DNA of 64,000 nt from Tubulanus polymorphus (Eukaryota; Animalia; Nemertea). The stretch lies in NCBI RefSeq assembly GCF_964204645.1, contig NC_134032.1:1670416-1734415 (forward strand). The letters run 5' to 3'. Of the stretch, positions 14,695 to 57,130 are shown one piece after another (the first letter of the stretch is position 1; each line of letters begins with the position of its first letter). The notes beneath the pieces were generated by a model. That model was given only the letters and a program-made list of their open reading frames with translations, was not told where the DNA came from and ran no database searches. The translations under genes were made by a program, and so were the position numbers.

Positions 14695-14755
<61 letters not shown>

Positions 14756-14783
14756 TAGCATTATTATTATTAGCATTAATTAG

Positions 14784-14826
<43 letters not shown>

Positions 14827-17800: not shown

Positions 17801-20800
17801 AAGGTATTCTGATAGGTACCTTACCAAGGTATTCTGATAGGTACCTTACCAAGGTATTCTGATAGGTACCTAACCAAGGCATTCTGATAGGTACCTTACC
17901 AAGGTATTCTGATAGGAACCTTACCAAGGTATTCTGATAGGTACCTTACCAAGGTATTCTGATAGGAACCTTACCAAGGTATTCTGATAGGTACCTTACC
18001 AAGGTATTCTGATAGGAACCTTACCAAGGTATTCTGATAGTTACCTTACCAAGGTATTCTGATAGGTACCTTACCAAGGTATTCTGATAGTTACCTTACC
18101 AAGGTATTCTGATAGGAACCTTACCAAGGTATTCTGATAGGAACCTTACCAAGGTATTCTGATAGGTACCTTACCAAGGTATTCTGATAGGTACCTTACC
18201 AAGGTATTCTGATAGGTACCTTACCAAGGTATTCTGATAGTTACCTTACCAAGGTATTCTGATAGTTACCTTACCAAGGCATTCTGATAGGTACCTTACC
18301 ATGGTATTCTGATAGGTACCTTACCAAGGTATTCTGATAGGTACCTTACCAAGGTATTCTGATAGGAACCTTACCAAGGTATTCTGATAGTTACCTTACC
18401 AAGGTATTCTGATAGGAACCTTACCAAGGTATTCTGATAGGTACCTTACCAAGGCATTCTGATAGGTACCTTACCAAGGTATTCTGATAGGTGCCTTACC
18501 AAGGTATTCAGATAGGTACCTTACCAAGGTATTCTGATAGGAACCTTACCAAGGTATTCTGATAGTTACCTTACCAAGGTATTCTGATAGGAACCTTACC
18601 AAGGTATTCTGATAGGTACCTTACCAAGGCATTCTGATAGGAACCTTACCAAGGCATTCTGATAGTTACCTTACCAAGGCATTCTGATAGGAACCTTACC
18701 AAGGTATTCTGATAGGTTCCTTACCAAGGTATTCTGATAGTTACCTTACCAAGGTATTCTGATAGGTACCTTACCAAGGTATTCTGATAGGTACCTTACC
18801 AAGGTATTCTGATAGGTACCTAACCAAGGTATTCTGATAGGTACCTTACCAAGGCATTCTGATAGGAACCTTACCAAGGCATTCTGATAGGTACCTTACC
18901 AAGGTATTCTGATAGGTACCTTACCAAGGTATTCTGATAGTTACCTTACCAAGGCATTCTGATAGGAACCTTACCAAGGTATTCTGATTGTTACCTTACC
19001 AAGGTATTCTGATAGGTACCTTACCAAGGTATTCTGATAGGTACCTTACAAAGGCATTCTGATAGTCACCTTACCAAGGAATTCTGATAGGTACCTTACC
19101 AAGATATTCTGAAAGAGGAACCTTACCAAGGTATTCTGATAGGTACCTTTCCAAGGTATTCTGATAGGTACCTTACCAAGGTATTCTGATAGTTACCTTA
19201 CCAAGGCATTCTGATAGGAACCTTACCAAGGTATTCTGATAGGTACCTTATCAAGGTATTCTGATAGGAACCTTACCAAGGTATTCTGATAGTTACCTTA
19301 CCAAGGTATTCTGATAGTCACCTTACCAAGGTATTCTGATAGTTACCTTACCAAGGTATTCTGATAGGAACCTTATCAAGGCATTCTGATAGGTACCTTA
19401 CCAAGGTATTCTGATAGGAACCTTACCAAGGTATTCTGATAGGTACCTTACCAAGGTATTCTGATAGGTACCTTACCAAGGTATTCTGATAGGTACCTTA
19501 CAAAGGCATTCTGATAGGAACCTTACCAAGGCATTCTGATAGGTACCTTACCAAGGTATTCTGATAGGTACCTTACCAAGGTATTCTGATAGGTATCTTA
19601 CCAAGGTATTCTGATAGTTACCTTACCAAGGCATTCTGATAGGTACCTTACCAAGGTATTCTGATAGTCACCTTACCAAGGTATTCTGATAGGAACCTTA
19701 CCAAGGTATTCTGATAGGTACCTTACCAAGGTATTCTGATAGTTACCTTACCAAGGTATTCTGATAGGAACCTTACCAAGGTATTCTGATAGGTACCTTA
19801 CCAAGGTATTCTGATAGGAACCTTACCAAGGTATTCTGATAGGTACCTTACCAAGGTATTCTGATAGGAACCTTACCAAGGTATTCTGATAGGTACCTTA
19901 CCAAGGTATTCTGTTAGGTACCTTACAAAGGCATTCTGTTGATGTCAAAGCAGGATTCATGAAGTCAGTAATCTCATCAGAAAGGCTGTATATAAAAACG
20001 TTGTGTTTATATGAAGGCACTGTATTTCAGGTAATCGCACGCACAATGTCGGGAATGATTGACAAGCTGTCGACGGCAGTGTTAGACCACGCCTCCCCGA
20101 ATATGATCAACAATAACGTATTGATTTCTCGACTGAAGAAACCGAGCAGTAAAGACTTGACCGCGTTAACTTCGGATGAAGATCAACTGAAGTTAGAGTT
20201 CGGGGCGCTAACGAATATGGTAATTAACTCCTTAATTAATATCGGCCTGTAATTACCTACGTAAAATACCAACTGGTTTATGGATTCGAAAAGGCTTTTA
20301 GAAGTTTACAGTTTCGACTCATTTCTATGCAAAATACACAGTGGCCTGGCACAAAAAGTTTATGACCCCAGTATCCTAGGTACTGGGGTCAAAAACTTTA
20401 TGTGTCAGGTCCCTGTGGCGCAATAAAATGTTCAGGGTTTGGAGGAAAAATTGGCCTAATTCGTTTAAATTGTTCAAATTATTGCTCACGACATTGTATT
20501 TGTTTATAGTGAACATGTAACGGCTTATAATTTGTTGGTAATGTTTATAGTGAGTTACGAGGTCAATGGTTGTTATTATGTTCACCAGGGGGCGTTGAAT
20601 AGTGAAATGATGTTTCATATCCTTTTATATTGGCACCTAGATTGGTACCTTAAGTTATGAGGTCATTGGTTCTGATATGCTTACCTTCTTTTTATATTGG
20701 CGCCTGATATTCTTACTTTTTAGAATTGGCAATATAACGTAGAGGATACTCTGGACAGTTGCTTAGCACTCGTAAACAATGAAATGAGAGCCAGCAAGTT

Positions 20801-29750: not shown

Positions 29751-30028
29751 AATGCTCTTCGCACGATTGGTAGAACACTATATCCGTGTTGACGCGATGA
29801 GCAGAGAATCCCACAATGATAATAAAAAGTCCGAAAATGAAACTTCGAGACAGTAGTTTATTTCAACGTTTCGACTATATCCTAATAGTCATCTTCAGGA
29901 ATGATTCATCTTCATTCCTGAAGATGACTATTAGGATATAGTCGAAACGTTGAAATAAACTACTATCTCGAAGTTTCATTTTCGGACTTTTTATTATCAT
30001 TGTGGGATTCTCTCCTCAATGCTCTTCG
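29751..30028. mobile_element. Penelope-like inverted-repeat insert with a hammerhead core on each arm
   Basis: ~100-bp inverted arms spanning 29804-30012; same core as the 69-bp array; 11-bp TSD AATGCTCTTCG (29751-29761, 30018-30028). Confidence 0.75.
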
Positions 30029-36237: not shown

Positions 36238-37188
36238 ATGAATTCTACTCAGGTGATGATTGGTCGAGCTTATATCAGTCACATGGTTCTCATGTCGGTG
36301 GTGAACAAGTCTGGAGTCTACCTTACTGTGACACTGGTCGTACTGCCTGTCGTGTTCATGTTTGGAACGCTTGGAAATTCGGCTACTTTCCTGATAATGA
36401 TAAGTCGCAGATTCCGCGGTTTATCTTACGCTAACTATCTGATCGTTTTGTCTATCAGTGATTTCATGATTTGCATCACTTATACACTGATGCCTGTTTT
36501 ACAGTTTGTTCTCTTTCACGTTAAAGGTGGTCCGATATTCGTGATGAATTCACTGATCGGTTGTCAAATATATGAATTTGTAATGGCGCTTGTATTCTGC
36601 AATAGTGCGTGGTTTATAGTAGCGATATCTCTAGAACGCGCGGCAGTTGTTCTCTTCCCGTTCACATCTCGTTTGATATGTACACCGAGATTCGCTAGAT
36701 TTGTTATATTGTTAATGACTGTAGTGAATGCGCTGGTTCTGTATCTCGGTCCTGTTTTGCGGATGCATTTTACCGATAGATATTTTGAATGTTACCACGA
36801 CCTTTCTGACCAATTAACACATTTTGCCATGACTGCCGTCCATTTCAATATTCTCCCGTTTGCTCTCATCATTGCATCAAATTCTGTTATAATAATTCAG
36901 TTATTCAGGGGTTCGAAAATGGTTTCGTCCGATCAGAAAACTAAAAAAGCGAAACGTACGACAATAATGCTCGTAACAGTTTCACTAGCATTTGCAATAT
37001 TCATATTTCCAACCACTATAACCACGTATCTACCAATCTCACTGGCGCTGAAAGATTTTGTCTACGACATTTTCTTTCAGTTTCAAATGTTTAACTATGT
37101 CGTGAATTTCTACATATATCTTCTGTTGGGACGAGAAGTTCGTGAATATTTCTGTGCGAAAATCCGCTGTAGAAATTCAGTGAAATGA
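36238..37188 (+). CDS. Intronless class A (rhodopsin-like) peptide-receptor-type GPCR
   Basis: 316 aa, 7 TM; GN (TM1), LSISD (TM2), SLERA (TM3), P in TM5/TM6, NFYIY (TM7). Confidence 0.9.
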   Translation: MNSTQVMIGRAYISHMVLMSVVNKSGVYLTVTLVVLPVVFMFGTLGNSATFLIMISRRFRGLSYANYLIVLSISDFMICITYTLMPVLQFVLFHVKGGPIFVMNSLIGCQIYEFVMALVFCNSAWFIVAISLERAAVVLFPFTSRLICTPRFARFVILLMTVVNALVLYLGPVLRMHFTDRYFECYHDLSDQLTHFAMTAVHFNILPFALIIASNSVIIIQLFRGSKMVSSDQKTKKAKRTTIMLVTVSLAFAIFIFPTTITTYLPISLALKDFVYDIFFQFQMFNYVVNFYIYLLLGREVREYFCAKIRCRNSVK

Positions 37189-38674
37189 CCACCGATTCAA
37201 CCGCCGACCCGAAATAAAAAACGGGCTCGTGAAAAATTGATAGTTAATGTTTCCTACATTTATTTCCCTACATTATCAAGACCCAATGTGAAAAAAGTTT
37301 CTCGGACCTACTAATTTTTATTTCTTTTTTCCTGAATATGGAATCCGTCCATCTGTAGTTTACATACTTCCACGATTTGCACTGTAAGATCTAGATTTGA
37401 ATTCCGTTGAAAAAGTGCAATTTAGGCTAAAAAAAAATTGATACCTTGTTTCTCCGCTCTGCTGAGCTTAAATGTTGACCCGGCCGGCCGCCTATCTAAC
37501 AAATACATTACTTTTTTTAAAATCGTGATCAATTTTACCATAACAGACCCGGCCGCTATAGAAATGAACTGTTTATAAATTTTATTTTTTGTTTAGCCTT
37601 AGGTTCTGATGATAGATTCCGTACATACCCTAACCAGATACGTAAAGATGTCGTTTGAACAAATATGCCTCCCGTAGAAAAATAACGATATCGATTTTAG
37701 TAACTACGAGCCATCATTATTCGGAGCTCTCGCTACTAAACATTCAGCAAACATTTTTCTAACAAAAAAAAAAATTACGCGAGAAAATAAGAAACTTGTA
37801 CTCATTCTTTTACCAAAGGTGTGACTGTGATTTTATGCGGTACATATTTATTCTAAAATATTTATGATGAAAAATCAAATCGATAGATCATCGTAACGAA
37901 CGTATGTGTTCAGTCCGCTGGCGAAATTCGATATTTCAAAATTGTGTAATTGAGAACGCTCCCGATTGCTGTATGTTAACAAAATTTAATTGGCAACCAG
38001 ATACGTAAGTTGCAGTTTTCACCTTGGATAGACCTGCGATGGCGCTATCTAATGAGGCCTTGTAAATAAATATCCCCGATTTAACGTTATTATCGAAAGC
38101 AGCTTCAAATTACATTACGCACCCCTTGTATCATAAATAGCGTTAAAGATAGTAGTCGAAAAAAACACTCCAATCCGTGTATGCTGTAGACATTTTAAGA
38201 TATTCGTGGCTGCAAAATAATAATCATATAAAATTCGAATTGTGGAATTTCTGTAATTAACGTTAAGATATTCGGGTCTTTTCCAAGATTTCGATATGAA
38301 ATTTTTTACAACAGTAAACCACCGAGTACACCGAGTTGTTTTGGGGTATAAGCATCAAATCTATACAGGGTTTACTGCTGATGTACTGCTGATACAACGG
38401 GCCTTTTCTACGATTTTGATATGAAATTCGACCATGCATGCGATATGTCTTTATCAATATCTACGCGCGGTATTAACTAAATCTAACTCATACAGAATCT
38501 TCAGGGCCATATACAGCCAGAAGACCCTGATATTTCAACCAATCAATGATGAATCAATTAAGTACACCTTAGGGTATCAATTACAATTGGAAACAGCATC
38601 TTCAGGGCCACAGGTAGCCAGACAATCTGGATCTTTTATTGGAAATCAGTTCAGTAAAAATTCCGAAAAATTGA

Positions 38675-38963
38675 GAGGGCGCCACGAGGTGGTCATAGAA
38701 CCAGCGGGTTACGAGTTCACAGCGAAGTGAACGTCACGAGGCTGCTAGAGATGGCGCCACGAGCTGGTCATAGATCCTGCGGGCTACGAGTTCACAGCGA
38801 AGTGAGCGTCACGAGCGCTGCTAGAGAGGGCGCTACGAGCTGGTCATATATCCAGCGGGCTACGAGTTCACAGCGAAGTGAGCGTCACGAGGCTGCTAGA
38901 GAGGGCGCCACGAGCTGGTCATATATCCAGCGGGCTACGAGTTCACAGCGAAGTTAGCGTCAC
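38675..38963. repeat. 75-76-bp minisatellite, left part (continues at 53291-53370 after a 14.3-kb insertion)
   Basis: GAGTTCACAGCG at 38713, 38788, 38864, 38939; the unit resumes in register at 53295. Confidence 0.9.
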
Positions 38964-39044
38964 TGTTGCGTGCCGAATAGGAATCGTGCCATCTGAGAAT
39001 ATATGCGCACTACTCTAAATTTAAAATTGCTTTGGCGAAACGAT

Positions 39045-39091
39045 GATTTTAGCGGGCTACCGGCGCTTCGCGCCGGTAGCCCGCTAAAATC
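39045..39091. other. Perfect 22-bp-stem hairpin with a TTC/GAA loop
   Basis: GATTTTAGCGGGCTACCGGCGC-TTC-GCGCCGGTAGCCCGCTAAAATC. Confidence 0.9.
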
Positions 39092-41996
39092 TCTCCTCTT
39101 TCCTCTTTCTTTTCTTCTCCCCCTTCTTCCCATTTCTTCTATAGAATTGTATAGAAAATGAATTCATAGATATCATCTGATATCATATCCGTTTCTTTGC
39201 TAGAATTTTAGATGATATCAGAATATTAGCCTGCCCAGATTAGGCAAGCCGCAACTATATACTTTTTTTCTGAAAAAATAAGCTTTAGAGAAAGACTAAT
39301 TCCTTGCTTAAAAAAGAAAAAGCAATCTTAATATGAAAATAAACAAGTTGTCTTTTGAGTTCTGATATGGCTACCGCCTGCTTTTCGATTATGCGCATCT
39401 TCTTTTTCCCAAAATATCAAGACATCATATATATAGTTGCGGGACCCATCAAAAATTAGGAATATTTTATAATTCCATGTTTTGATGATAAATTGTGACT
39501 TATAGCCAACCGCTTACTTTCTGGTAAAATAAATCGTTACGCTGTAGAAATGCGCTGTTAGGATTTACGAACAGAATTAGGCCTAACATCCCCAAATGCT
39601 TCATTCATAATTCAAAATTCCGTATAAATGTTAAACATTCGCGCTCGCAACTTGATTTTTTTTGTCATGGTATTTTGATGAGCTGAATTTTTGGAAGTTT
39701 CAATTTCCCCTACGCCACCAACTAATGATTTGTCTTGGTCTTGTATAAAGTTTTTTCATGAAATGTTTAATATTAGGGAAATTTTGTTCGTCACCTAAAG
39801 CAATTTTCAAAAATTGATTGGATATCATAAGGTGATTTCTAACAATGCGGTTCGTAGGCCTACAATCATCCTCCCAGATTCGGTATTCTTCATGTAAAAT
39901 GAGATGGCTCCTAAATTCAACTGCTTTCAGTTTGACTTTGATTTCTTTTGGGAAACGGCGATTTCATTTCAAAATTATATAGGCCTTCCTCGTTATCGGA
40001 GTTGCAATATTTCTATTTCTTGAAGTGACGGCTTTGTATGCGGACGATATGACAATCAAGAATAGGAGATAATCATATTTTTCTCTCTACTAACAGAATA
40101 ATTTGATTGAACTTCTATGGTTACGCGTTTTCGAGCGAATATGCGCCGAACCTTAACGCCGAACCAATCATTTTTCAGACTTCCTATTATATCATATTCA
40201 ATCGTGTGGTAAGTTTATATACTGGCATGTGTTACTGCAACTAGGCCTGGGGAACAGTTGGATCACCGAAAAAACGTATCTGCTGCAGATTATCTGAGCG
40301 CTTGTATTTTTTTTTCAAATTTTCTGGCACGACCGAGACAATAGGCCTACTCTAGTGCTCAGCTGCTCAGAATCAAATTGTTGCAAAAACATCAACAAAC
40401 ACTATCAAGTCGATGCTCACTCAAATAAAACGTACACTATCTTCAGTTTGTGACAAGAATGAACAGGGAGATATGTACCTTTATAAATAAAGATACACGC
40501 AAAATTATAATTTTTGAAATTGATAATGATCATATATAGTAATTCATGGGACTAACTACGCTATAGTGTACTCCCTATTGAATTCAAAATACATGTATGT
40601 GTTAAACTGAGGCAAACATACCAACCCTGCCTATGCCAATTAATACATATCACATCACTTTGGCTAGAGTTGAATGATCGATAAATCCATAACAAAATCA
40701 CAACTAAAACAAAATTCAAATTTGAAGTCAGATCGCTATGGGGTCCTGAAAGAAGCACCCATATCATAGAAAACCATTGTCATTATCGAATGTGGGCTAT
40801 ATATTCTGTAGTATAAGTGTGTGTCGGTGTAATGATTAGGCCCGGATCAGGTTACTGACTAGGAAAACCCACATTGAAAAATTAAGAACCTTGTTCGACT
40901 ATGATTTCTTTTATTAATATTTCATGAAATAAGTTGAGTGATAATATAGACCTTTGAAGAGTAAGACTTTTTACACTAATTGCAATGATTAAGATTTTAC
41001 ATAAGGCTTTATCCATGTTTGAAGGATTGTTCAATAACAGTTACATAAGCTAGATAGAGGAAATTTAAATATTCAGGCCCAGCTAGTAAGCCTGTCTTTA
41101 AGGAGCGCAATTGGATTGATTAAGATAGGATCCATTGCGCGTTGATAAAGAATCAATAGATATTGCGGCATTCTAAATTAGATTATTTAAAAACCGCAAG
41201 TTTAGGCGTTCAATTGGTCCTAACATTCATTAGAAACATCAGATCAAAATGATACAGCGTTTCGATACTCGTCATAAAGTACATTGGCTGCATCAATTTG
41301 GTGAATTTTATATGGCAAGCACAATTTTTCTAAATTTTTAAATGTTAAAGGAAAGTTTAAGGTGCTGGACCAATAGTTATCTACACATTTGTTTGGGTCA
41401 AAAATATGCCTCCACAAGGTGAATGATATGGCAAAAATTAAGAACATTCCAAATCAAGACACATGACAGTCATTTTTGGGGGAAGATGTAGACTTTTCCC
41501 AACATAATTCGAGGATTTAATTCCCAAACTTTCATTTTTCATTGCGCCTGCATGACCTATAGTCAAGTAGTTTTCACAGCTAGAATCACCAGCCACAGAC
41601 GGTTTGTTAAAAAAACCCAGGTTGGTTTATAATATAATCTATGAAATTTGATATGTAATTTGCTTGCTTATTCTTGATATAAATGAACTACCCTGATATT
41701 TGGTTCGGTACAGAGGCACGCAAAGTAGGTTCATGGCTGGAGGAAAGTAACCTTCATGTCAATGAGATTCACGACAAACATTTTCAGCAGTTTGCAGTTC
41801 TGAGGGAATTTTTGCAAACCGTAGGATCAAAAGTCTGGATATTTATCGGTCAACATGGTAAATAGGCTGAAAATTAAATAGTTCATATTCAAGACAGCGA
41901 TGACTGACACCATTTTTGTGAGTGAATAAATGCAGGCTTATTTCGCGTTTGAAGTTTTAGTGGTTTACCACATTGCATCTTAAAACTTTATACATA

Positions 41997-42094
41997 TAGT
42001 AAAGTCCGCTGCACAAGGCACCGAAAAAAAGTTTTTTCCTCGTGAAAAACGTTTTTGATGTGTCTTGTTATGCCGTGTGCAGCGGACTTAACTA
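41997..42094. mobile_element. Small TAG...CTA MITE (Academ-like ends)
   Basis: TAGTAAAGTCCGCTGCACAAGGCA / TGCCGTGTGCAGCGGACTTAACTA. Confidence 0.55.
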
Positions 42095-42554
42095 ATCTTG
42101 TTTTATATTTTAATAACTTAACGTACCGGGTGTTTTTTGTCATTTATATAAAAAAGCGTGTTCATGATTATGGATAGTTGGGTTTGTCAAAATAAATTTA
42201 AAAAGATAAGTTCTAGTTATTTGTGGTTAAAAGTTGGTTTGATTTTCAGGTTTTCATATCCCCATATTTCACACGAATACAAAAGGATCGGTTTAACCAT
42301 AGAACCACACAGAAACTTGCTCACTTGAGTAAAAGACTAGCTCAAGGAAACATTTTTAGGACCTTGTTTTGGACGTTTTCGTTATTTCTGTGGGATTCGC
42401 TTTAAATTATGCATGGCTACATCCCTGTAGCATGTGAATTAAGTTCCAGAGTAAATTTCCAGACGGCAGATGAAGGCAATGACATAAGTTAGGGGACCCT
42501 AAATACTGAAACAAAAAATCCAATCAAAACGTCTACTAAGTTTATTCTATAATA

Positions 42555-42735
42555 CAGTGGAACTTCGTAACAGCGAGGTTCATGGGACCAGAAAATATGT
42601 TCGTTATTACCGATAGTTCGTTTCGTTATATCCAGTATGAAATTAATAGTTATCTTTCTTACTTGGGACAAAATTCTATATTTGTTATATCCGATGAGTC
42701 GTTGTTTTCGAGTTTGCTATAACGAGGTTCCACTG
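42555..42735. mobile_element. Tc1/mariner-pogo type MITE with TA TSD
   Basis: TA|CAGTGGAACTTCG...CGAGGTTCCACTG|TA. Confidence 0.8.
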
Positions 42736-45700
42736 TAATGCACGAATAACTGACGAGGTAAACTTAGCAAAAGAGTTCAATATAAGTTCCACAAAGCTAA
42801 ACAGTTCAAATATCAAAACGATACAATTTATTATAAAAAAAACAGAATTATCGGTTTTCCACTTAAAGCATTATTAAGGAATGAAAACTAATACAGCGTA
42901 TCAAAAACATATATAAAAAAAAAACGCTAATTAATACAATCTTCGATTATCTTCTGTACAATATTTCTCTCATGCACATCGGTTTTCGAGAATTAATTGA
43001 TGAAATCGTATACCAGTAGCTACAGCTTGTTGGACGTCATTAGTCTGAACAGGAGGCATGGAAGAAGGCATGTGAGACCATCTATCTTGGTTTAGTAATG
43101 CAAGATAAAAATTAATATTGCACTAATATATAGCATACTGACCCACTACCTGACTCAGCTAAATAACTGCAAGTATTCAAAATAATATTGAAAGAGTTTT
43201 TTGATACTTTGGATGTTCGTAGTAATCGAGAATGGGTGCGCAGCGGTAAATCAAGTATTCGTCTAATGGCCGTCCTCCATGCCTTAAAAATGTGTCATAC
43301 ATACATACAAGTAGACATCAGTCCATTGGTAATACATTTATGAATCCCTATAAGTAATCTGTTTAAACTACTAATAATATATATATGTACATGTACATGA
43401 ATTTAGGCCACAGGAGGACCATCTCAGGTCAGTCCAATTCTGATGAGCCCTTGAGCGATACAAATGTAATAAAAAATATCAAGATAATTGATTAAAGCGT
43501 TTTCAAAATCTCCCTTCAAAACTTCAAAAGTGTGTAAGTGCTAAGTTCAGCAATGCCATATTCCCTATATGGACGGATGGATGAATGCGAAGATAGACAA
43601 CGGATGAACAGTGAGCACAATAATCTGGTGGGACTTAAGTCTCAAGTGGGCTAAAAAGGAAATATCCTGATGCGGACGTAATTTCTATCGACAAAATATT
43701 ACAACCATTCACAGAGGCTCTTCGACTTTGACATTCCGTCAACGATATTGGATAACACTTAACGACGTATGTCAGCAGAATAGCTGAGAATCTACAAATC
43801 AACTTTTAAGTGGCCTTATATTGTAATTTTCAATCTTAAAATTTGCCAATCTGTTGTACCGCTCAGCTGTATTTTTTCCTAACGTCGCAGCACAGACTTC
43901 ATGAGCTTGGTTATCACCGATACCAAAATATCTTGCCACCAGGGATCTAATTATGTGTATCCTTATTCTTGCACGTACTGATGAAGAACTGAAAGATGAG
44001 AGAAATCAAATAAGAAAAAACTTCATATCTATCTATCCATATATGTATAAATTTGAATCCTAGATCTGTACCTAACAAACACATTTGAGTGAAGACAAAA
44101 ATTTAAATACATTGAACTGGTATACCAGTCATACAGGGATTCAGGAATTGAAATTTTAATACAATCATTTACAAATGCAATGAAATACCTACCTTAATCT
44201 CTTTTGAAGAATTTTGGATACTAAATGAATTGGTGCCATGAATGGAACTTCCATTTGTGAGTAAGAATACACCATTCTGAAAATGATAGTTTAACGGCTT
44301 TAAAGCAAATATTTGTACTGTTGACCCAACTGTATTTTGAAGGTTAAATTATTGGAGGGTTGTACAAACAAACCGTGAGATATAATGTTTTATTCAATGA
44401 TGTTTTAATATTTGAACTTGAATACCGAGTGCAACATGCTCTTTCAGTAGTACGAAACATTGCTTTACCAAAATAATCTGTGAGAGTGTTCAAATATTTA
44501 TGTGATTTGAGTAAACTTACATTGGATGTACTGTAAATTTTACAAAAAGTGACTCAGCAATCAGTTGAACGACACAGCTGACATTATTTTCGACAACACC
44601 AGCACCATACGCATTATCAGACAAAATATTTTCCTCCTGCAAGCTGAATGCATAGAGCAATTATCTTTATCGTTAAACAATTGCAAATATCAAGAGAAAC
44701 TAAAATTATGGCACAAATGGGATGTCATAATGATATGAATTTCTCTAGAGTCCATCAGATGATGATTACATGAACTTGGCACCTCCATTTTCTGCCTTAA
44801 GCTTTAGATCAGAAATTCATAGAAATTATGGATGTTGATTATTAATTCATCCATAATATGGGTCGCTACTATGGTCAAGATTCAGATCTGTATTAAATCC
44901 CTAGATGTACATGAGCTGATGCTTTTTTTCAAAAATTAGCCAAATCGATCAAATTTTCAGAATCTCCTGTCATGAAACTTTGTTCTTACATGCTTGGTAG
45001 ACTGAATATCTTCTCAATATTATATCTGAGCTCAAGGAGAACCTGAAAGTATAATAGAGAGTTGGAGTGGTGTACATTTGAAAGTCCTATAGACATATTA
45101 ACGGGACACCATGCCACTGCTCAATGGGATCAAAATCTATGAAAGACTACAGCAACACCGTCTGCTGACTAGTTGAAACCGATATGTTTAATGATCTAAA
45201 CTAATATTCAATAATAGAAAGTAGGAATAGAAGATCTATGCTATACTGAAGTTGGCTATAGATTAGCCATCTGAGGGCTCAAGACATATATACTCACTTT
45301 CCCATTGCTGCGATACAAATATGACAAAGGAATCATTCTTGAATCGTCTACATCGTTTTCATCATCAATGAGTTTATTCAGCTTTTGCGAACAAATCATA
45401 CATACAATGCTATCAGACATTCTAAATTTAATGAATAAATACATAACATGTAAGCATCAAAGAAACTGAATTTACAAAATGTAATGTTAACCATGAACTT
45501 AAGATTAATAACCTCGAGCTACTTTTGGAAAAACAGATAATACACGCAGAAGTAATGGACAATCTGACCTCTTCCTTGACCTAGAAGAAACAAAAGCAAA
45601 GAGACCAAATTAGACATTTCTGTAGAATAACTACTGGCAGGATCAATTTGACAATTATAGGTTGATGCTATAAATGATGGACAGTTTGTAGTAGTACGTA

Positions 45701-48700
45701 TATATGATTTTACCTGATTATAAGCACTGAGCTTTGTTTCGACGATATGTATGGGACATGTGTATGTTCTAATCAAATGACAATCTTTTTCTTCCAGACC
45801 GACACATCCAGGATGAATGAGCCATTTACAACTTACATTCAAACATTCCATAACATGATAGTTGCTATAAAATAAGAAGAGAGTTAGTTTTTGAATCTAT
45901 GGAGTGAATAGTTTTCAATTAAGAATTATTGATATCTTCAATGTATCATATTCAGTAACGGTATACTGGTTTGAATTTCATACAATAATGAAGGCAAAAA
46001 GAAATTATAAAATTAAATCCTTTGATTCAGAGTTTAAGTGGTTTTGTTTCAGGTAAAAAAGAAATAACATATCTTGCAATGTAATATAATGCAGTTACGT
46101 ATTTTGTATTGGTCTTGACTGGAAGTACAACCATAATAAGTCACATATAAGCTATGTGGGGGGGGGGGGGAGATTGTAAGGTGAAGCACATGTGAGAATG
46201 AATAAAGGGCTAATATGCGCCATGAGTGGTGAAGACCTCTGCAGATCCAAACACAACATTCTTCAAGGGTGGTTCATTCACATAGACATGTAGATTAAAT
46301 GATATCATTAGGGCGGTTTTAATATACAATTTCAACAATCAAGAACCTTTGACATTTTATACCAACTCCTAGCTTTCTGATGCATAATTTCAGTGAAATT
46401 TTTGGCTCAGTCATGTAAATGTTGACAATAAAAAGATGTGCTACATCTTGAAGTCAATCAAGATCAAAATTAAATCCTTATTGGCTCTCAATACCTAAAA
46501 TAAAGATTAAGTTACGTTATATTGTGCAAATGAACGGAACTAACTTCTCTGTCCTCATTTGATATTATGACAAAAATATACAGGATGTATGCTTGTGTGG
46601 TTCCAAAGGGTTTGTCCGCAGCGATTATTTTATGATAATAAAACTTTTGAGTCACTTTTGCCTGTAATTGCACATTTTGCATTGGTTTTTGTTATATAAT
46701 GTGACAGAATGGGCATGAACCAGATTAAAGAATTAGGTGCTGCGTCAGAATGGTGATTCGCCTTAGTTATCTGACTCATGTTCAAGACATAGCTGCCAGG
46801 TGTCTGATGAATAATCAATAAATGATAAAATATTCCTGGTTGCAAATGATCAATGGATTTACAGTACCTTACTGTCATTTGTTTCAAACCATTAACCATC
46901 AATATCGCAAACAAAAGATATATAATGTCCTCCTTCCAAAGAAGAGCCTTGATGAACCACAACACTGCAAAGTTTAAAATTCTGAAAAATATGTGACAGT
47001 GTTATTTATGTGCAGTATTCCTAAAAAACTAGAATATCTTCAGTAAATGAGCATACCTCGTTGTGGAAGCTAAGAACTTCATCAAATCTCACAAAATCAT
47101 TTCTTTTTTCCAATGTCTTACTGAATCTTAAAAGGACAAGACAGTCTATTAGTTATAACTCCACCAATCAATTCTAGAGATACTGTTCATACCGTATGCC
47201 ATGCGTAAAATACCATTCTACAGGGTGCCTCAAAAAATGTGTTTTCAGTTACACAAAAGCAGTTTAAGCAAATTGACAGATTAAGTATTTACCTGTTAAT
47301 TTGAATAGCTAAACATTCAGGAGCCTTCAAAGGTTTAGTAGATTTCCTTGCAACCTTTAATTTGCAACTTCAATGAAAAACGATGGAAATGAAATCATAG
47401 CTAAAAGATAATACCTATAAATATGGAATCAGTACTTATGATCACTACATGAAATAAACATAACAAACTCACTGGGAACACTCATAGTCATCCAGTTCCT
47501 CACTACAAAAATATGAATTAAGTAACAAGACAAGGGTTGTGACTCCTTTTCCTTTATCCTTCTGAAATACAAAGAAAATCTCAAATGTCATATAGGAACT
47601 ATTTATAGGAAACATATAGAAATATTCAGCGGTTTAAGGGACCAAAAACACAGCTACACACCCCAAGTGATAGACTGAGGTTTGTGAATCCATCAGTTTG
47701 TGTTGATTCAGTAGAACAGGATCTACAGATGACTGAAAGAGAAAGTCATGAAATATTCAAACAGGGCTTACTGATGTGAAAATTAAGTGTAGTAAAAATG
47801 AATGAATCATTGCTTGAAAAGCTTTGCTACTTAAAATACCTTTTGTTTGAAGAGAACCATGGAAAAACTTAACAATCTGTTTAAAATCAGAACTGAAAAA
47901 ATAAACACACATTATATTCATCATCTATCTAGCCTCAATTTTTTGATAAGTATAAACATAATTGCATTCGTTCATTCGCTTGTTGCTTCATTCATTTTGT
48001 TTACCTTGAATTTTCATCTTCAATTTTACTCATCCAACGAATGAAGAACTCATGGGCATCACACTGACGTCTTGAGTAGAGCCCTATATCTAAGATAAAA
48101 TGGGGTGAAAATCAGTTTGGTTCAGTAAAGGAAAGTTGAAGAAAGAAGTGAGAAAGAAGCAAAACCACATTTTTTTCCAGTTCACCACGGTTGTGTATGA
48201 ACACCAAACCATCCAGCTCTTCATTATAGAACAGATAAGCAAGGGTCTCATTCCTCGAGACATCACCTACATATTTTGATCATAGTAGTGTATAACATAC
48301 ATGAATAGCATAAAAGTCATGAAGCGAAGCAACATATATAAAACAGAAAACAGATGAAATAGGAGTGAAATATTGCACTGGTCATTGTGGTCACCTCAAA
48401 GTCTTCAGATACAGAAGCAAGTGGCAATGAGGCTCTAGTCATTTAAGACCCTACTCAAAATTAGGGGATACCTATGGAATTTCCAAGAAAATAACGCCTA
48501 TGTGACTGTCATTGGTTTGGCAAGAAATCATACTATAATTAAATATCATATCAAAAGTGTTTGATACAGGCTATTCCTAGTATAAGCCCATCTGATCACT
48601 TTTCCTGAGATAGGCACATAAAATGTTTTCCTAAATCGCTGCAATAAGGTGAAAAAAGACTTTTGGTGCAACGACACAACTAGCACACCACGCCTACTGG

Positions 48701-49556
48701 CGAAATGCTTGACAATCTGAAAATAATCAAATACCACATTATTCCGTTATTCGCCTGGTGATCATACTCAGAAACGAATTATGTACCTTGAAACTCACCC
48801 AGCACGAATTTCAACACATTATAATGGCAAACCATAATCACTACCATTAGGAAGCTACAGGTCTCAGAATTCAGGGCACAAGTGACCTTTTTTTGTCAAA
48901 ATATCAAGGAACTTCATTGAAGCATATTCAAGATTTCCCAGCCAGCCATCTGGAATTTGATCAGGCCAGTTTTTGGCTCCAGATGCATCTAAAGTAGCTA
49001 TTAACCTAATATCAAAACAAACCATTGAAGCATCAATTACAGTTCAATTTTCCACAAATTACTGGGGCCTGTCTACAAACAATGAATGAAAAGTGAACAA
49101 ATTAGGCCCGCTAGGATTTAAGTCCCAAGTGGGTTAAAAAGCATTTGCATTGTAATGAGACATAATCATGTGGATTACTTAATACTTAATACCCTGAGAT
49201 GAAGCCTATATGTGTAGAGTATTTACATAGACAATGTGAAGCAAAGAAAATTGATGAAAAACAAATAGGAAGATTATATAATATACCAACCATTTTGCCA
49301 TTATTCTGTCAGGAAAAGGAAATTGAAATATAAACATTAGGTCAAAAACACTTTAATTCTCAAATTACACAACTAATCTAGTTTATGAATTAGAGATATT
49401 TTATTTCAAAGGACTAAAAATTGCAGTATAATGAGAAATTTTGATCAAAGTAAATACTTACTAGGCAAAAGACATTTCATGGCACTAGGATTCACTACAT
49501 GACTAATATTTGCTGATGTACTTCGCAGAACTAGACACAGATCCTCCAGTGTCTGG

Positions 49557-50050
49557 GTTCAAGTTCAAGTTCAAGTTCAAATTTATTTCACAGAAAGCAT
49601 GACAGGCTATGTACACAGGTTGAGAGAAAACAAACAATAAAATTTACAATTTTTTTAAACAAAGCACAATTATAAAAGAGAGAGAGAGGACAGTAGCTTT
49701 CAGTGTGGGCCAAGCAAAGCCTTTAGGCCGCTGTCGCAAGCACCCAGGGAAAAAAAAAACGAAAGGGAAATGAAGAAATAAAGTGGAAGGAAATGAAAGT
49801 TGATGATTTTTGATAATTTCAGGAGAGTTTATATGAGTAAGCTAGAGGGTTCAGGAGAGTGAGCAATTATAACAATTAGGGTTATTACATTGATGGATAT
49901 CATTGTAGGTGGAGGTGAGATATGGTCTGAGTTTACGTTTTAAATTTTGTTTGCTTGTTTGTAGGATATCATACCTACTGAGGGTGAAATTATCCTGCTT
50001 TACCTCGAAATCAAAGATGTTATGTGTCAATTCTATGAACAATAGGAATG
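49557..50050 (-). mobile_element. 5'-truncated CR1/L2-like LINE 3' end
   Basis: ORF end LKRKLRPYL...CNNPNCYNC; AATAAA followed by a (TTGAAC)n tail on the minus strand. Confidence 0.6.
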
Positions 50051-52079
50051 CTTGGCTGTGAGACGATTATCCCACCCTTAAGGCTGGCTTGAGGCTGATT
50101 AGCGGGATATGAGATCCTCCCAGTTGCTTCCCTGCTTTTGTCCGGTTCCGATTACTGGCAACTGCACTGGATCACATGGTCATGAGCATTTTGAGGATAG
50201 ATTTAAATTATTTTGAATTGCGAAATATATTTCCAGTTGAAAAGCAGTTTCGTTAAGACTTTTATCTTTCTGATTCGGTTTTGAATACAATGTGTAAGCG
50301 ACATCATATAAAGATGGCCGCTCACTACGTAATTCTACCAATTTCGTTTCTAGATCTTTAGTCCAGTCAACTGCAATGCTGGACGTTTGGTTTGCGTTTG
50401 AAACTACTTGAAATTACCGGTAAATATTTGTGACATGATACAAATGACACTAATGTAGCAATCAAAATTTGTACTATGATCATTCGGTCTCTAATTGGCT
50501 GGTATTCCTGCGCTCAGTTCCATCGCGTCAAGTCAGGAGAGGGAGGTTGTCATACACATAGGATAACATATATACCGGTACCCATCCTTTATATGGGCTA
50601 AGCATAAAGTCAAATTATGGCTCCTCACCGAAATTTGATGATGATGATTAGGCCTATATATCCAATCATAGAACTCATCATGAGCTACAATTTTGCAAAG
50701 TGGTGACAATTTTGCAATTGTGGTAAAAATATGCCTAGGTAACTTGACTAAAATTGAACCGATATGCATTAGGCTATTCCTCAGGCATTGATATTCACAG
50801 GGCTCTGCCCCAAATGACATCCAAGTCAAGTCACGGGGCCGTATATTTTGGTGCAGCTGAAAAGTAGCGATACTTAAAATAATATACATAGATGATGATA
50901 AATATTTCAGTTAGATATATCATAATAGCATAGGCTATATGGTATCTATAGTTAGTCTGAATACTGGTGGTCGTTTCACGAACGCCAGTTAACTTCGAAT
51001 TCGAAGGTGATAATCAAAAATTCTTCGAATTAGGCATAGATCATTTGATGATTAAATCTGTTTCACTAACGCAAATTAGCGAAAAATTAACCAATTCAAA
51101 TTATCTCAGATAATTCTGAATTAGTTGCCCATAATGCATTAGTCCTATAACATGAACAAGGTTTCATTCATAAATATCGTAGGATTTTTTGGTTGTACAA
51201 TGAAATTGTATAATTGATCGTTCCGTATTTTCTTTGCAATTCTTTCTCCAATGAGATTTTCAATAGGCCCTAAATCTAAAAATGTGTAGGTGATATATGA
51301 TAAATATCTTAATTTGCATTTTTGAAATGGGCATCGAAAATTAACCTAAAAATTTTTATTCGCATTGGGCAACTAACCCAAATTAGAGGCTTAATCCCTG
51401 TATGTAAAACCGGGCCCAGGGAGTTAGGGTGAGTTTAAGGGTCCGTTTTACACTTAGAGAGATGAAAGGGTTAGGGTAAGGTTGAGATACGATACGTTGA
51501 ATGCTATATGAATTGAAAACTTACAGCCAGATTGCAAGAACGTATTTTATATCTATATTTAGAGGATATATACACTGGTCCGGGTTCGAATCCCGCTCTA
51601 TTTTCTCTAAATCTGTTCAAATTTTCTTGAATTTTCAAAGTTTTGCATTTGCGCAGCATCAATTAGGCAATCAAAACAAGTCATTGGAAAAATGACATAG
51701 TCTAATAATAAGAAAGGCAGCCAATATTTTGCCAATGCGGTATTATTCCTCTTAACACTATTTTGCCAATGGCGCGTTCTGAATGACTAATTGCGGCTGC
51801 ATAGGAAAGTTTGGAGAACAGAGTTAGCCTAGACAAAATAAGAGCATAGACTAGAGTGGGATTCGAACCCGGACCACCAGATTACTGGCCTAACGTCTTT
51901 CCACTAGACTAGACCACTGGGCTCACTGACAACTACCCGTAATTTTTCACTACAGCCTCACCTTTACCAAAACTCTATGGGTAATAACGGACACTTAAGT
52001 GGCTAAACCTCACCCTAACCGGCGCGATTTTATTGTTACATTTCATAGCCATTGGGCATTGGCAAAATAGCATATCGCT

Positions 52080-52798
52080 GTGGCTACTCGTACGGACCCG
52101 TACGGATTACTCTGGAGGCTATTCATACGGAACTAGGATCTGTTTCACCAAGAATCTTAGTGTCTGATGTACCACAGGATTGGTTACACTAGGATCGTAG
52201 AGCGACGGAGATCACTGGTGGAGACAACCACTGCCAGTGCTGGGTGAAGGATCTGTACGCTAATTACTGTCGCTGATTGGCCGATAAACGCCCGCCATTC
52301 AAGGAAAGTGTGGAGAATATAGTTAGAGAACAATAGAGTGGATCAAGCGAGACTCGAACCTGGGCCAGTAGATAACTAGCACAGCATCATACCACTAATG
52401 TCTATTTATTAATTGATGAGACCTGTTTTTCTGGGATATTTTGCTTACTATTTGGGGTACATACCTCATTTATGTCTTAACAGAATGCCAAAAATCGCGG
52501 ACAACAACTGAATATCCGATATTATTCCAGTTCTGTACCAATTAGATGGATTAGCAAAAAGACTCCTTAAGTCCAGTTGAATGAGAGAGAAAATCCTCCG
52601 TTTTGTGAAATTTCTTGGATTTGAACATTGTTACCACTGAGCTCACTGACAGTCAGCCGAATGTTTTGACTAGCCTGACCGTACGAATAATTCCACAGTA
52701 ATCCGTACGGGTGCGTACGAATAGCCTACGGAATTATTCATACGGGCGCGTACGAATAGCCTACGGAATTATTCGTACGTGTCTGTACGAATAGCCAC
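52080..52798. mobile_element. MITE with CGTACG-rich subterminal repeats in USP intron 1
   Basis: GTGGCTACTCGTACGGAC / GTCTGTACGAATAGCCAC inverted ends. Confidence 0.55.
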
Positions 52799-53290
52799 TT
52801 GATTTACTAAAATAATGCTGCATTATTGGCAAAATATCCACTTCCATTCTTTAAAGCCTTCAAAATGGGCTTTATATATACTTACGACATCTATTGAAAA
52901 GCTCCATTGAATTCTGGCTTTCTGCGGACTTTTTAGAGAACAGTTTGAAATGTTCTGCTACACACTTAACCGATTGAATAACGCTGTTCATATAACAAGA
53001 CTGCCCATAATTAGTAAGACCACGAGTGTATTTTGAAGGCCTCTTAGAATATGCCCAAGCAGTAGAACCTAAGAACATCATATTGTATGTTGAAAACTGA
53101 AAAAAACTGTTAAATCGCTGAGTCGAAACTTGTCGAAAAAGTTATTCCAACTTGGCGCAAGTATCCGTGGCGCCTCCTACTATTGCCAACGTTTCAGTAT
53201 AGGATGTTGTTTGCATTTTGATTCTTACTCTGGCATGCACTTCCGCCGATAATTCTTACTTGGCACGATATTCCCACTTGGCGCATAACA

Positions 53291-53370
53291 TCACTAGCGC
53301 TGCTAGAGATGGCGCCACGAGCTGGTCATAGATCCTGCGGGCTACGAGTTCACAGCGAAGTGGCGTCACG
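53291..53370. repeat. Right part of the split 75-bp minisatellite
   Basis: Near-identical to the units at 38740-38890. Confidence 0.9.
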
Positions 53371-53846: not shown

Positions 53847-54797
53847 ATGAATTCAACTCAGATGCAAATTGGCAGAGTTTATAACAGTTATATCGTTCTC
53901 ATGTCCGTGGTTAACAAGTCTGGAATCTACCGCACTGTGACATTGGCCTTTCTACCCGTCGTGTTCATGTTAGGAGCCTTCGGAAATTCGGCTACTTTTC
54001 TGATAATGATAAATCGCAGATTCCGCAGTTTATCCTACGCTAACTATCTGATCATTCTTTCTGCTAGTGATTTTGTCTACTGCATCAGTTTAACGCTGAT
54101 GCCCGTTTTGCAGTTTGTTCTCTCGCGCGATAAAGACGGTCCGATATTCTTCATGAATTCGCTGATAGTTTGCAAAATCTACGAGTTTGTAATGACTCTT
54201 GCCGGTGGCAATAGCGCGTGGTTAATAGTAGCGATATCTCTAGAACGCGTGGCGGTTGTTCTCTTCCCGATCAAATCTCGTTTGATATGTACACCGAGAG
54301 TGGCTAGATTTGTTATATTGATAATTACCGTAGTAAATTCGTTGTTTCTATATCTCACACCTACTTTGTCGATACAGTTTACTGACCAGTCTTTTGGATG
54401 TTTCTACAAGTTGATTGATCAGATTACAGCTTTTGCCATAATTGTCATCCACCTTGTGGTTTTACCATTAACTCTGATCATTGCATCAAATTCTGTCATA
54501 ATAATTCAGTTATTCAGAGGTTCAAAATTGGTGTCGTCCGATCAGAAAACCGCGAAATCAAAACGTACGACAATAATGCTCGTAACGGTTTCACTCGCAT
54601 TTGCAATATTTACACTTCCAACCACTATAACAGTATTTTTACCAATCTCTCAGGAGAAGAAAGATTTTGTTTATGATATTTTCACTCAATTCTATGTTTG
54701 TAACTTTGTGATAAATTTTTACATATATCTTTTACTGGGACGGGAAATTCGTGAATATTTCTGTATGAAAATCCGCTGTAGAAATGCAGTGAAATAA
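53847..54797 (+). CDS. Intronless class A GPCR, paralogue of 36238-37188
   Basis: 316 aa, colinear with the first copy (MNSTQ..., SLERV, NFYIYLLLGRE). Confidence 0.9.
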   Translation: MNSTQMQIGRVYNSYIVLMSVVNKSGIYRTVTLAFLPVVFMLGAFGNSATFLIMINRRFRSLSYANYLIILSASDFVYCISLTLMPVLQFVLSRDKDGPIFFMNSLIVCKIYEFVMTLAGGNSAWLIVAISLERVAVVLFPIKSRLICTPRVARFVILIITVVNSLFLYLTPTLSIQFTDQSFGCFYKLIDQITAFAIIVIHLVVLPLTLIIASNSVIIIQLFRGSKLVSSDQKTAKSKRTTIMLVTVSLAFAIFTLPTTITVFLPISQEKKDFVYDIFTQFYVCNFVINFYIYLLLGREIREYFCMKIRCRNAVK

Positions 54798-56107: not shown

Positions 56108-57130
56108 ATGTCGGTGAATGAAACGTCAGACCCGGGGCAGGTTTGCTGTGTTCCCTGTAACGCTTCGATCGTATTAAACTACAGGGCGATAATGACTTAT
56201 GCGCGGGGCTCGTTTTATTCGATCGGTATCATCTCGAACTGTCTCGCGTTTGTTGTACTCCATCTGATGACACTCGGAGGTAGCAGTATTCTATATTTGA
56301 AGATGCTGGCTGTAGCTGATTGCGTGAACTGTCTGACCGGGCTGTTCGGGCGCGAGATGTTGTTTGTTTCGACCTCGTTAGAATATCTTCACTATAACCA
56401 CATTTATCAACAATATAAACGCCATGTTTATCTTTACGTGGACGCCATCTTCCAGATGACGACGACCACAAGTTCGTGGCTACTGTTCGCATTAAGCTTA
56501 GACCGCTATGTAGCTATCAGATTCCCGCTGTCTGCTAGGAATATATGCACGATTCGTAACGCAGTTCGTGTTTCGGTTGCTATTTGGATTCTAACATTTA
56601 TTTTCGATTTTCCGACGATTTGGGATCTAGAAACGTACTTTAGGATGCCCGGTCAGCCTTGTAAATATGTTGTACAAAGGAAACTCCTGCTTAAGAATAA
56701 ACAATACGCTTTGTATTACGATTTTGTATTTGGCAAAATTGTGCTGAAGTTTATTCCGGGTTTGATTGTTTTAGGTTGTAACGTACACATGATGATGTTG
56801 GTTCGGTTGGCGGCTCGTCTGAGACACAAACTTCAACAAATCGACGTCAAAGATGAAGCTTCGACGAATAGTAAACAAGGACGACAAATAACTCTGACGA
56901 TATTAGCTTTAAATATAGTATTTATGGTTGAATATGGAATGTCTTTAATAAACACATTTATACCGGCGATTTTACCCGATGGATACACATATCGTCCGTA
57001 TCATTCGGGGCAGTTGTTACACGCTATCAATGCTATGATAAATCTATTCGTTTATTTAGGAATTCGAAAAGGTTTTGGAGAAACTTTAGTTTGGTTTTTG
57101 AGTTGTCGTCGGTTTGGAAAGCGAGTGTAG
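56108..57130 (+). CDS. Intronless class A GPCR (FMRFamide/peptide-receptor-like)
   Basis: 340 aa, 7 TM; LAVAD, SLDRYVAIRFP, NLFVY. Confidence 0.9.
   Translation: MSVNETSDPGQVCCVPCNASIVLNYRAIMTYARGSFYSIGIISNCLAFVVLHLMTLGGSSILYLKMLAVADCVNCLTGLFGREMLFVSTSLEYLHYNHIYQQYKRHVYLYVDAIFQMTTTTSSWLLFALSLDRYVAIRFPLSARNICTIRNAVRVSVAIWILTFIFDFPTIWDLETYFRMPGQPCKYVVQRKLLLKNKQYALYYDFVFGKIVLKFIPGLIVLGCNVHMMMLVRLAARLRHKLQQIDVKDEASTNSKQGRQITLTILALNIVFMVEYGMSLINTFIPAILPDGYTYRPYHSGQLLHAINAMINLFVYLGIRKGFGETLVWFLSCRRFGKRV

What the first reader, a model, noticed from the sequence alone, without database searches (positions are those of the whole stretch)
38960..53294. 14.3-kb TGT...ACA transposon-like element carrying a deubiquitinase-PHD cargo gene
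Seen: a 75-bp minisatellite is split exactly at TCAC, which is duplicated (38960-38963, 53291-53294). The insert begins TGTT, ends AACA, and has a ~39-bp imperfect TIR (about 28/39 by eye, mostly transitions). The TIR is built from a repeated GCCAAGT(A/G)(A/G)GAAT motif that recurs inward at the right end (about 53144-53159 and 53221-53236), like transposase binding sites. Established: TGT/ACA ends with a 4-bp TSD characterise Ginger transposons, and Ginger1 proteins are known to carry OTU or Ulp1 proteases and PHD fingers. Inference: this is an unusually large Ginger-like element whose cargo is a different protease class (USP/C19) in an intron-rich gene, possibly a chromatin-targeted deubiquitinase that counters host silencing. 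I know of no described family with this make-up. No integrase was recognisable in this copy, so it may be non-autonomous.
Basis: partly seen in the sequence, partly recalled or inferred. Interest (0 to 1): 0.88.

Follow-up and report, generated by a model that had tools for sequence, protein, structure and literature searches.

The report
Giant jumping gene with deubiquitinase
This is a broken, internally deleted copy of a young 23.5-kb cut-and-paste jumping gene of a ribbon worm, whose complete copies carry a ubiquitin-removing enzyme in front of the jumping enzyme and a histone-reader-like finger behind it, a kit that two other jumping-gene families in the same genome partly share.

Summary
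The element is real. It has TGT...ACA ends and a TCAC duplication, a paralogue shows the empty site, and three more 99%-identical copies each have their own 4-bp TSD. Full-length copies are 23.5 kb. The window copy has lost 9.2 kb that holds an intron-rich H2C2-DDE-CXC transposase of the KRBA2/Ginger2 clade.

The 'USP-PHD cargo gene' is a by-product of that deletion. The PHD is in the transposase's C-terminal tail. The USP (10 exons, catalytic triad intact in the C5 copy, broken here) lies upstream.

A second family (26 kb, 6-bp TSD, different integrase subclade) and a Mutator family carry a USP with the same intron scaffold. One flanking intron pair is shared with the host USP36/42-like gene. 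The host appears to be Tubulanus polymorphus.

The scan had already noted this family and the Mutator-USP on other DNA. Deubiquitinases on transposons are known (OTU, Ulp1, UCH in Helitrons). I found no report of a USP on Ginger2.

The parts
38964..53290 (-). Internally deleted (non-autonomous) copy, 14,327 bp, of a 23.5-kb Ginger2-clade DNA transposon (family F1); genes run on the minus strand
   Evidence: copies 99.2-99.6% identical
38960..38963 (.). Left 4-bp target-site duplication TCAC
   Evidence: empty site
53291..53294 (.). Right 4-bp target-site duplication TCAC
38964..39009 (+). Left imperfect TIR with two degenerate copies of the terminal motif (38972-38984, 38988-39000)
53242..53290 (-). 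Right imperfect TIR with two exact motif copies (53252-53264, 53270-53282)
53144..53236 (-). Subterminal motif copies (exact at 53144-53156; one-base variant at 53221-53236); probable transposase binding sites (inference)
39045..39091 (.). Perfect 22-nt hairpin 80 bp inside the left end; a shortened form persists in a 77%-identical older relative at C4:15.255 Mb
52886..53081 (-). USP exon 1 with the catalytic Cys box
   Evidence: Pfam UCH 24.8 bits; RefSeq model P0184 joins exon 1 to exon 2
49462..50005 (-). USP exon 2; in this copy the acceptor is altered and a 427-bp dispersed repeat (about 49558-49982) interrupts it
48005..48089 (-). USP exon 3 (QQD/EF-box equivalent)
47840..47892 (-). USP exon 4
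47662..47732 (-). USP exon 5 (first CxxC of the fingers zinc site)
47473..47561 (-). USP exon 6
47293..47367 (-). USP exon 7
47057..47126 (-). USP exon 8
46868..46981 (-). USP exon 9 with the His box and Asn/Asp; TAA stop at 46892-46894 in this copy only
   Evidence: Pfam UCH 26.4 bits
46473..46494 (-). First 22 nt of USP exon 10; the rest of the exon is deleted
46472..46473 (.). Breakpoint of a clean 9.2-kb internal deletion (C5 element positions 8199-17433). It removed the linker exons, the whole H2C2-rve-CXC core and the first tail exons, including the first CxC of the PHD
45714..45864 (-). PHD-finger exon of the transposase tail (phase 2 in, phase 0 out), orphaned here
43800..45580 (-). 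Six further tail exons (45580-45513, 45421-45298, 45042-44990, 44643-44521, 44276-44193, 43988 to about 43800), with two CxxC motifs and an unassigned helical C-terminus
52397..52633 (.). 238-bp nested repeat in USP intron 1, absent from the C1, C4 and C5 copies
38673..38963 (+). 75-bp minisatellite, left part (target)
53295..53370 (+). 75-bp minisatellite, right part (target)

Best explanation
The stretch is a dead deletion derivative of a young 23.5-kb cut-and-paste transposon whose transposase belongs to the KRBA2-like (Ginger2) clade. Shown: ends, TSDs, empty site, copies, and the domain order on one strand (USP, then tandem mini-exons, then H2C2-DDE-CXC, then PHD). The transposase from a complete copy would bind the repeated terminal motifs, cut at TG...CA ends and insert with a 4-bp stagger; this copy was moved in trans or lost its core after insertion. 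Inferred from splice signals: the PHD is part of the transposase tail (about 85%), and the USP is joined through a polar linker to the transposase N-terminus in one ~40-exon, ~1,350-aa protein (about 60%). Inferred mechanism: the tethered USP removes ubiquitin from the transposase or its complex, protecting it from proteasomal turnover, and possibly from nucleosomes or repair factors at the donor or target site, while the PHD reads histone H3 tails. It would fill the role that OTU or Ulp1 domains have on related transposases.
For: Four copies with both ends and distinct 4-bp TSDs; empty site; rve E 3e-9 in the deleted part; best named relative KRBA2-like; tree groups F1 with it at 97/92. USP exons 1-9 are GT-AG, phase-consistent and stop-free in C5 and C4, with Cys, His and Asn/Asp present. 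A splice model trained only on USP and core sites recovers the whole tail chain from the CXC donor through the PHD exon: score 47 against 19 for the opposite strand, 10-36 for 12 block shuffles and 10-14 for two non-coding stretches. The true last USP exon ends in a donor (97th percentile), followed by 3-5 symmetric phase-0 repeat exons whose number varies between copies without breaking frame. The first transposase exon has an open, in-frame upstream acceptor, and two in-frame routes join them in C5 and mostly in C4. Family F2 has the same order with an all-phase-0 join, and the Mutator family F3 has a strong in-frame chain from USP to transposase. Relatives of the F2 transposase carry OTU or Ulp1, whereas F2 has none and has the USP instead.
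Against: The linker middle is the weak point: acceptors at C5 element 14535 and 13668 score at only the 53rd and 69th percentile, C1 has a stop in the 13668 exon, and an in-frame Met sits where relatives' transposases seem to start. Exons are not clearly more conserved than introns among the near-identical copies, so selection is not shown directly. Close transposase relatives in other species sit in 5-7 kb elements with no USP within 10 kb, so the USP is not required for this clade. No activity was measured.
Confidence: 0.6

Rival explanations
1. Same element, but two neighbouring genes: a USP gene with a repetitive C-terminal tail, and a separately started transposase-PHD gene. The USP would act in trans.
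For: Weak acceptors in the linker middle and a Met at the start of the first core exon; an AATAAA at C5 element 13695 and several ATTAAA in the linker; RefSeq models a short USP-only product at two copies; unchecked note s1-492753.
Against: No convincing terminal exon follows the last USP exon; in-frame routes exist with polar peptides (0.76-0.78 polar against 0.50 background). The C1 copy under one RefSeq model is broken at USP exons 4 and 8, which could explain a split model. Short-read contigs would tend to break at 42-nt repeated exons (inference). F2 and F3 joins are in frame.
Confidence: 0.3
2. The USP is passive or host-serving cargo: a captured host gene fragment with no role in transposition.
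For: Related elements elsewhere lack it. The intron pair around the His exon matches the host USP36/42-like gene, so capture from host DNA is plausible.
Against: It is only distantly similar to any host USP region tested, yet keeps an open 10-exon frame and triad in three families with one intron scaffold. Neutral cargo would not be expected to stay intact over that divergence.
Confidence: 0.12
3. One reading: a stand-alone USP-PHD cargo gene in an element whose transposase is a separate gene.
For: In this copy the USP and PHD exons are adjacent and on one strand.
Against: They are 9.2 kb apart in full-length copies with the transposase between them. USP exon 9 ends in phase 0 while the PHD exon needs phase 2, and half of the PHD is deleted.
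Confidence: 0.03
4. A remnant of a Polinton/Maverick or of an LTR retrotransposon.
For: Large size; integrase-type catalytic core; F2 makes 6-bp TSDs like Polintons.
Against: No long ORF for polymerase, ATPase, capsid or reverse transcriptase in four F1 copies or in F2; no LTRs; intron-rich; 4-bp TSD in F1; H2C2 motif present.
Confidence: 0.02

Closest known systems
Ginger2/Tdd DNA transposons, KRBA2/SCAND3 clade (Bao 2010 PMC2836005; Llorens 2012 PMC3575427)
   Same: TGTNR ends, 4-bp TSD, short TIR (Ginger2-1_HM has 45 bp), H2C2 plus DDE core without visible YPYY or GPY/F motifs, best named hit KRBA2-like.
   Different: 23.5 kb against 2.7-6.7 kb; about 40 exons; upstream USP and downstream PHD, neither described for Ginger2; TSDs mostly GC-rich rather than RTATAY.
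Ginger1 with OTU or Ulp1 (plus PHD in Ginger1-9_HM) (PMC2836005)
   Same: A ubiquitin-family protease and a PHD on an integrase-type transposase; introns in the transposase gene.
   Different: Different integrase clade; the protease is C19/USP and lies N-terminal, not C-terminal; no CCGG/CCGT specificity.
Helentron/HLE2 elements with UCH, OTU or VTD domains (PMC11417382; PMC9741609)
   Same: A USP/UCH domain stably carried by a DNA transposon; Helitron VTD domains were shown to be active K48/K63 deubiquitinases.
   Different: Rolling-circle RepHel elements without TIR, TSD or DDE enzyme.
Trichomonas vaginalis XP_001314237.1, transposase_11 plus peptidase C19 (cited in PMC2836005)
   Same: A C19 domain in one protein with a DDE transposase.
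   Different: Other transposase family; a single protein record with no element described.
IS3EU/GingerRoot (PMC6839031; PMC10045372)
   Same: Large integrase-related elements up to 12.9 kb; 6-bp TSD as in family F2.
   Different: Mostly TA...TA ends and no HHCC motif; F1 has a 4-bp TSD; F1 and F2 cores are KRBA2-like.

Membership tests
Ginger2/Tdd | TGTNR termini with TIRs of about 45-300 bp | tested here: met
   TGTTG and TGTTA ends; imperfect TIR of 46/49 nt, at the short end of the range
Ginger2/Tdd | 4-bp (or 5-bp) TSD | tested here: met
   TCAC, CAGG, CCAC, AATA
Ginger2/Tdd | H2C2 zinc finger plus DDE integrase-like core | tested here: met
   In full-length copies only: rve E 3e-9; Integrase_H2C2 E 0.019 on half the motif, split by an intron
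Ginger2/Tdd | No YPYY and no GPY/F motif | tested here: met
   Neither seen by inspection of the translated core exons; no profile test
Ginger2/Tdd | Transposase clusters with Ginger2 | tested here: inconclusive
   Groups at 97/92 with a KRBA2-like protein, and PMC3575427 places KRBA2 inside Ginger2; no named Repbase Ginger2 sequence was available for the tree
Ginger2/Tdd | RTATAY target preference (a described trait from Nematostella elements, not part of the definition) | tested here: not met
   Three of four TSDs are at least half G+C
Ginger1 | CCGG/CCGT-specific TSD | tested here: not met
   0 of 4 paired copies; one single-ended copy is flanked by CCGG
Ginger1 | Gypsy-like integrase with YPYY and GPY/F; C-terminal OTU or Ulp1 | tested here: not met
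IS3EU/GingerRoot | 6-bp TSD and TA...TA (rarely TG...CA) ends | tested here: not met
   F1 has a 4-bp TSD; the separate family F2 has a 6-bp TSD but a KRBA2-like core
Polinton/Maverick | Protein-primed polymerase, ATPase and capsid genes | tested here: not met
   No such long ORFs in four copies
USP/C19 deubiquitinase | Cys box, His box with Asn/Asp, and intervening boxes in order | tested here: met
   Two exons over the Pfam UCH cut-off; open exon chain in C5 and C4
USP/C19 deubiquitinase | Catalytic activity on ubiquitin | not testable with these tools
   needs an assay
PHD finger | C4HC3 zinc ligands; histone-tail binding | tested here: inconclusive
   Ligand pattern present across two exons, last ligand His; Pfam PHD_NSD E 0.008 below cut-off; PHF2/PHF8 E 0.2-1; binding untested
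Repbase/Dfam Ginger families | Identity to a catalogued consensus | not testable with these tools
   libraries not available

The most novel reading that the evidence does not exclude
One intron-bearing USP-plus-linker module, descended from a USP36/42-like host gene, has been passed among unrelated transposases in this genome (two non-sister Ginger2-type clades and a Mutator). It is spliced onto their N-termini as a plug-in counter-defence against ubiquitin-based control of transposition, replacing the OTU domain of relatives, and the Ginger-type carriers form a giant (23-26 kb) multi-exon lineage with 4- or 6-bp TSDs.
Probability: 0.35. Interest if true: 0.8.

Novelty: new variant of a known kind. 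Interest (0 to 1): 0.62.

Why it matters
Bao et al. (2010) proposed that ubiquitin- and SUMO-proteases on transposases take part in transposition. I found no test of this for a DDE element in the searchable literature. Here are young, nearly intact elements of two superfamilies with a complete USP, so the idea becomes testable with one catalytic substitution. The family also extends the published Ginger size range about threefold. The same USP intron scaffold on three non-sister transposases points to module exchange between transposons or repeated capture of one host gene. Practically, such copies are annotated as host USP or KRBA2-like genes.

Tried and rejected

Rejected readings: (1) The 9.2-kb segment as a nested transposon: no TIR or TSD at its borders, and C4 keeps part of it. 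(2) A separate third gene after the transposase: the CXC exon ends in a strong donor. (3) A TAF13/SPT3-like look of one tail exon: half of it was intron polypyrimidine tract, and PDB, Pfam and Atlas gave nothing. (4) My first choice for the last USP exon (C5 element 17640, window 46661-46509, listed as USP10), replaced by 17455-17387. (5) Apparent F1-F2 protein matches at window 48700-49000 and C5 element 9750-9880: dispersed non-coding repeats. (6) RTC4-like or INTS8-like tail: weak and unconfirmed.

Dead ends: the USP exon 1 homologue search found only this genome's own model; a tail exon search found nothing; eight foreign loci around related transposases showed no USP (two are only 2 kb long).
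Full report
Observation. The insert runs from 38964 to 53290 (14,327 bp), begins TGTTG, ends TAACA and is flanked by TCAC on both sides; removing it restores the 75-bp minisatellite. The TIR is imperfect: 34 of 49 columns, with 7 of 9 mismatches in the first 38 columns being transitions. The terminal motif is exact three times within 150 bp of the right end and degenerate twice at the left end. The target lies between two paralogous 7-TM receptor genes.

Copies. The window is G000:C8:1670416-1734415 of a 268-Mb genome. A RefSeq name on the element's own USP fragment identifies the host as the nemertean Tubulanus polymorphus. Both ends recur at C5:3020251-3043885 (23,635 bp, TSD CAGG), C1:12711110-12734631 (23,522 bp, CCAC) and C4:14807580-14823592 (16,013 bp, AATA). 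Partial copies lie on C7, C11 and C77, and older 69-95% fragments elsewhere. The four complete-ended copies are 99.2-99.6% identical, so the family moved recently.

What the window copy lacks. It has a clean 9.2-kb deletion at 46472/46473 with no TIR or TSD at the borders. The missing part holds an intron-rich transposase core: H2C2 motif, rve (E 3e-9), an SH3-like stretch and a CXC motif. Its best named relative is KRBA2-like, and the tree joins them at 97/92. Llorens et al. place that clade in Ginger2 (PMC3575427). Ends and TSD length fit Ginger2 as defined by Bao et al. (PMC2836005); size and target composition do not match the published examples.

The USP. Nine exons from 53081 to 46868 are GT-AG, phase-consistent and stop-free in C5 and C4, with catalytic Cys, His and Asn/Asp. 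The tenth exon, which closes the fold, is at C5 element 17455-17387 (acceptor score 11), and the deletion cuts inside it. In the window the gene is also broken by an altered exon-2 acceptor, a 427-bp insertion in exon 2 and a stop in exon 9. C1 is broken at exons 4 and 8.

The PHD. The transposase CXC exon ends in a consensus donor in phase 2. A splice model trained only on USP and core sites finds a 14-exon in-frame chain from there through the PHD exon to the last exon, scoring 47 against 19 for the opposite strand and 10-36 for shuffles. The first CxC of the PHD is in a deleted exon. So the PHD belongs to the transposase tail, as in Ginger1-9_HM, and the adjacency of USP and PHD in the window is a product of the deletion. 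C5 is open through all but the last exon, which has a one-base shift.

One gene or two. After USP exon 10 the frame continues through five (C5), four (C1) or three (C4) 42-nt phase-0 exons in a 144-bp tandem repeat, then a strong 78-nt exon. The first core exon has an open upstream acceptor in phase 1, and two in-frame routes of polar peptides join them. That gives about 40 exons and 1,350 aa. The middle acceptors are weak, and I have no RNA data. I put fusion at about 60%.

Two more USP-bearing families. Crossing the rve and UCH searches revealed family F2: C5:12456856-12483097, 26.2 kb, TGT...ACA ends and a 6-bp TSD in three copies (CACGTC, CACGGC, TACACT). It has the same order of USP, integrase, zinc finger and tail. 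One tail exon is shared with F1 in sequence and phase, and genome-wide it matches only F1 and F2 copies. The F1 and F2 USP genes share at least seven intron positions and phases. Their integrases are not sisters: F2 groups with OTU- or Ulp1-bearing proteins, and an AU test rejects an F1+F2 clade (p 0.009; quick tree, 24 rows, about 140 columns). F2 itself lacks the OTU that its relatives carry. Family F3 (C9:4.386-4.393 Mb, with a 99% copy on C8) joins a USP with the same phase scaffold in frame to an 846-aa MULE/SWIM reading frame; earlier notes describe this Mutator. Of about 20 other USP His-box regions read from this genome, only the USP36/42-like gene has both introns that flank this exon in F1, F2 and F3. 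It scores best for F1 and F3 and second for F2. This is a hint of origin from 40 residues, not a phylogeny. Eight loci around related transposases from other organisms, several of them 5-7 kb elements, had no USP nearby.

Mechanism. Shown: cut-and-paste signatures, recent mobility, domain order and an intact catalytic triad. Inferred: splicing into one protein; deubiquitinase activity; protection of the transposase from ubiquitin-dependent turnover, or editing of ubiquitin at the integration site; PHD binding to H3 tails. The inference rests on OTU and Ulp1 domains in the equivalent role on Ginger1 (PMC2836005), on active Helitron deubiquitinases proposed to prevent degradation of transposition proteins (PMC9741609), and on H2B as a USP36 substrate (PMC7316882).

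Novelty. Proteases of the ubiquitin system on transposons are known, including UCH in Helentrons (PMC11417382) and a C19-transposase protein in Trichomonas. Ten paper searches found no USP on a Ginger2 element and no Ginger of this size. Repbase and Dfam could not be checked, and most subscription papers are not covered. The scan had already noted this family on other copies; my reading was reached before those look-ups. The additions here are family F2, its 6-bp TSD, and the shared USP intron scaffold across three non-sister transposases. Verdict: new variant of a known kind, interest 0.62.

Noticed in passing
L055:856 to L057:7097 (G000:C5:12456856-12483097): Family F2: 26.2-kb TGT...ACA element with a 6-bp TSD in three copies, an N-terminal USP gene and a KRBA2-like integrase of the OTU-bearing subclade but without OTU. 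A 6-bp TSD is atypical for Ginger.
   Followed up: partly
L102, L072, L075 (G000:C9:4386600-4393030); copy at C8:9173573: Family F3: USP joined by in-frame exons (a C2H2 finger and two repeated acidic exons) to an 846-aa MULE/SWIM frame. Its ends were not mapped.
   Followed up: partly
L085 (G000:C4:26324953-26325882) and C2:24203117: Two equal-scoring intronless UCH matches inside 1,758-aa open frames, with similar His boxes at C7:14.17 Mb, C9:9.75 Mb and C5:9.44 Mb; possibly a fourth mobile USP family.
   Followed up: no
L073 (G000:C2:12103707-12104123): Decayed, apparently intronless USP fragment with several stops.
   Followed up: no
L018:7310-8006 (C5 element 16310-17006): 144-bp tandem repeat, each unit holding a 42-nt phase-0 exon with strong splice sites; 5, 4 and 3 units in three copies. 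F3 has a similar repeated linker exon.
   Followed up: yes
L066 (G000:C4:15254974-15255069): Older 77%-identical left end with cleaner terminal motifs, flanked by GGCC: a related subfamily.
   Followed up: no
window 36238-37188, 53847-54797, 56108-57130: Tandem array of intronless rhodopsin-family 7-TM receptor genes in duplicated segments; the element sits between two paralogues.
   Followed up: partly
window 6269-7366: 69-bp tandem array (about 12 units) with inverted partial copies at 29803-30013.
   Followed up: partly
window 17189-19938: 2.75-kb array of a 25-bp unit (110 copies).
   Followed up: no
window 9706-12105 and 15668-17032: PXA-domain exon (sorting-nexin-like) and an intronless MFS transporter gene.
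   Followed up: partly
window 51576-51876 and 52080-52805: Nested small inverted-repeat elements and a 35-bp tandem repeat inside USP intron 1; one arm resembles a tRNA T-loop.
   Followed up: no
L078:8935-14412; L058:8843-15982: Ordinary-sized (5.5 and 7.1 kb) relatives of the F1 transposase with TIRs; L078 has TGT...ACA ends and no USP.
   Followed up: partly
L080:10001-23461: Ptychodera flava KRBA2-like gene followed by an OTU gene model on the same strand, probably one split transposase-OTU gene.
   Followed up: no
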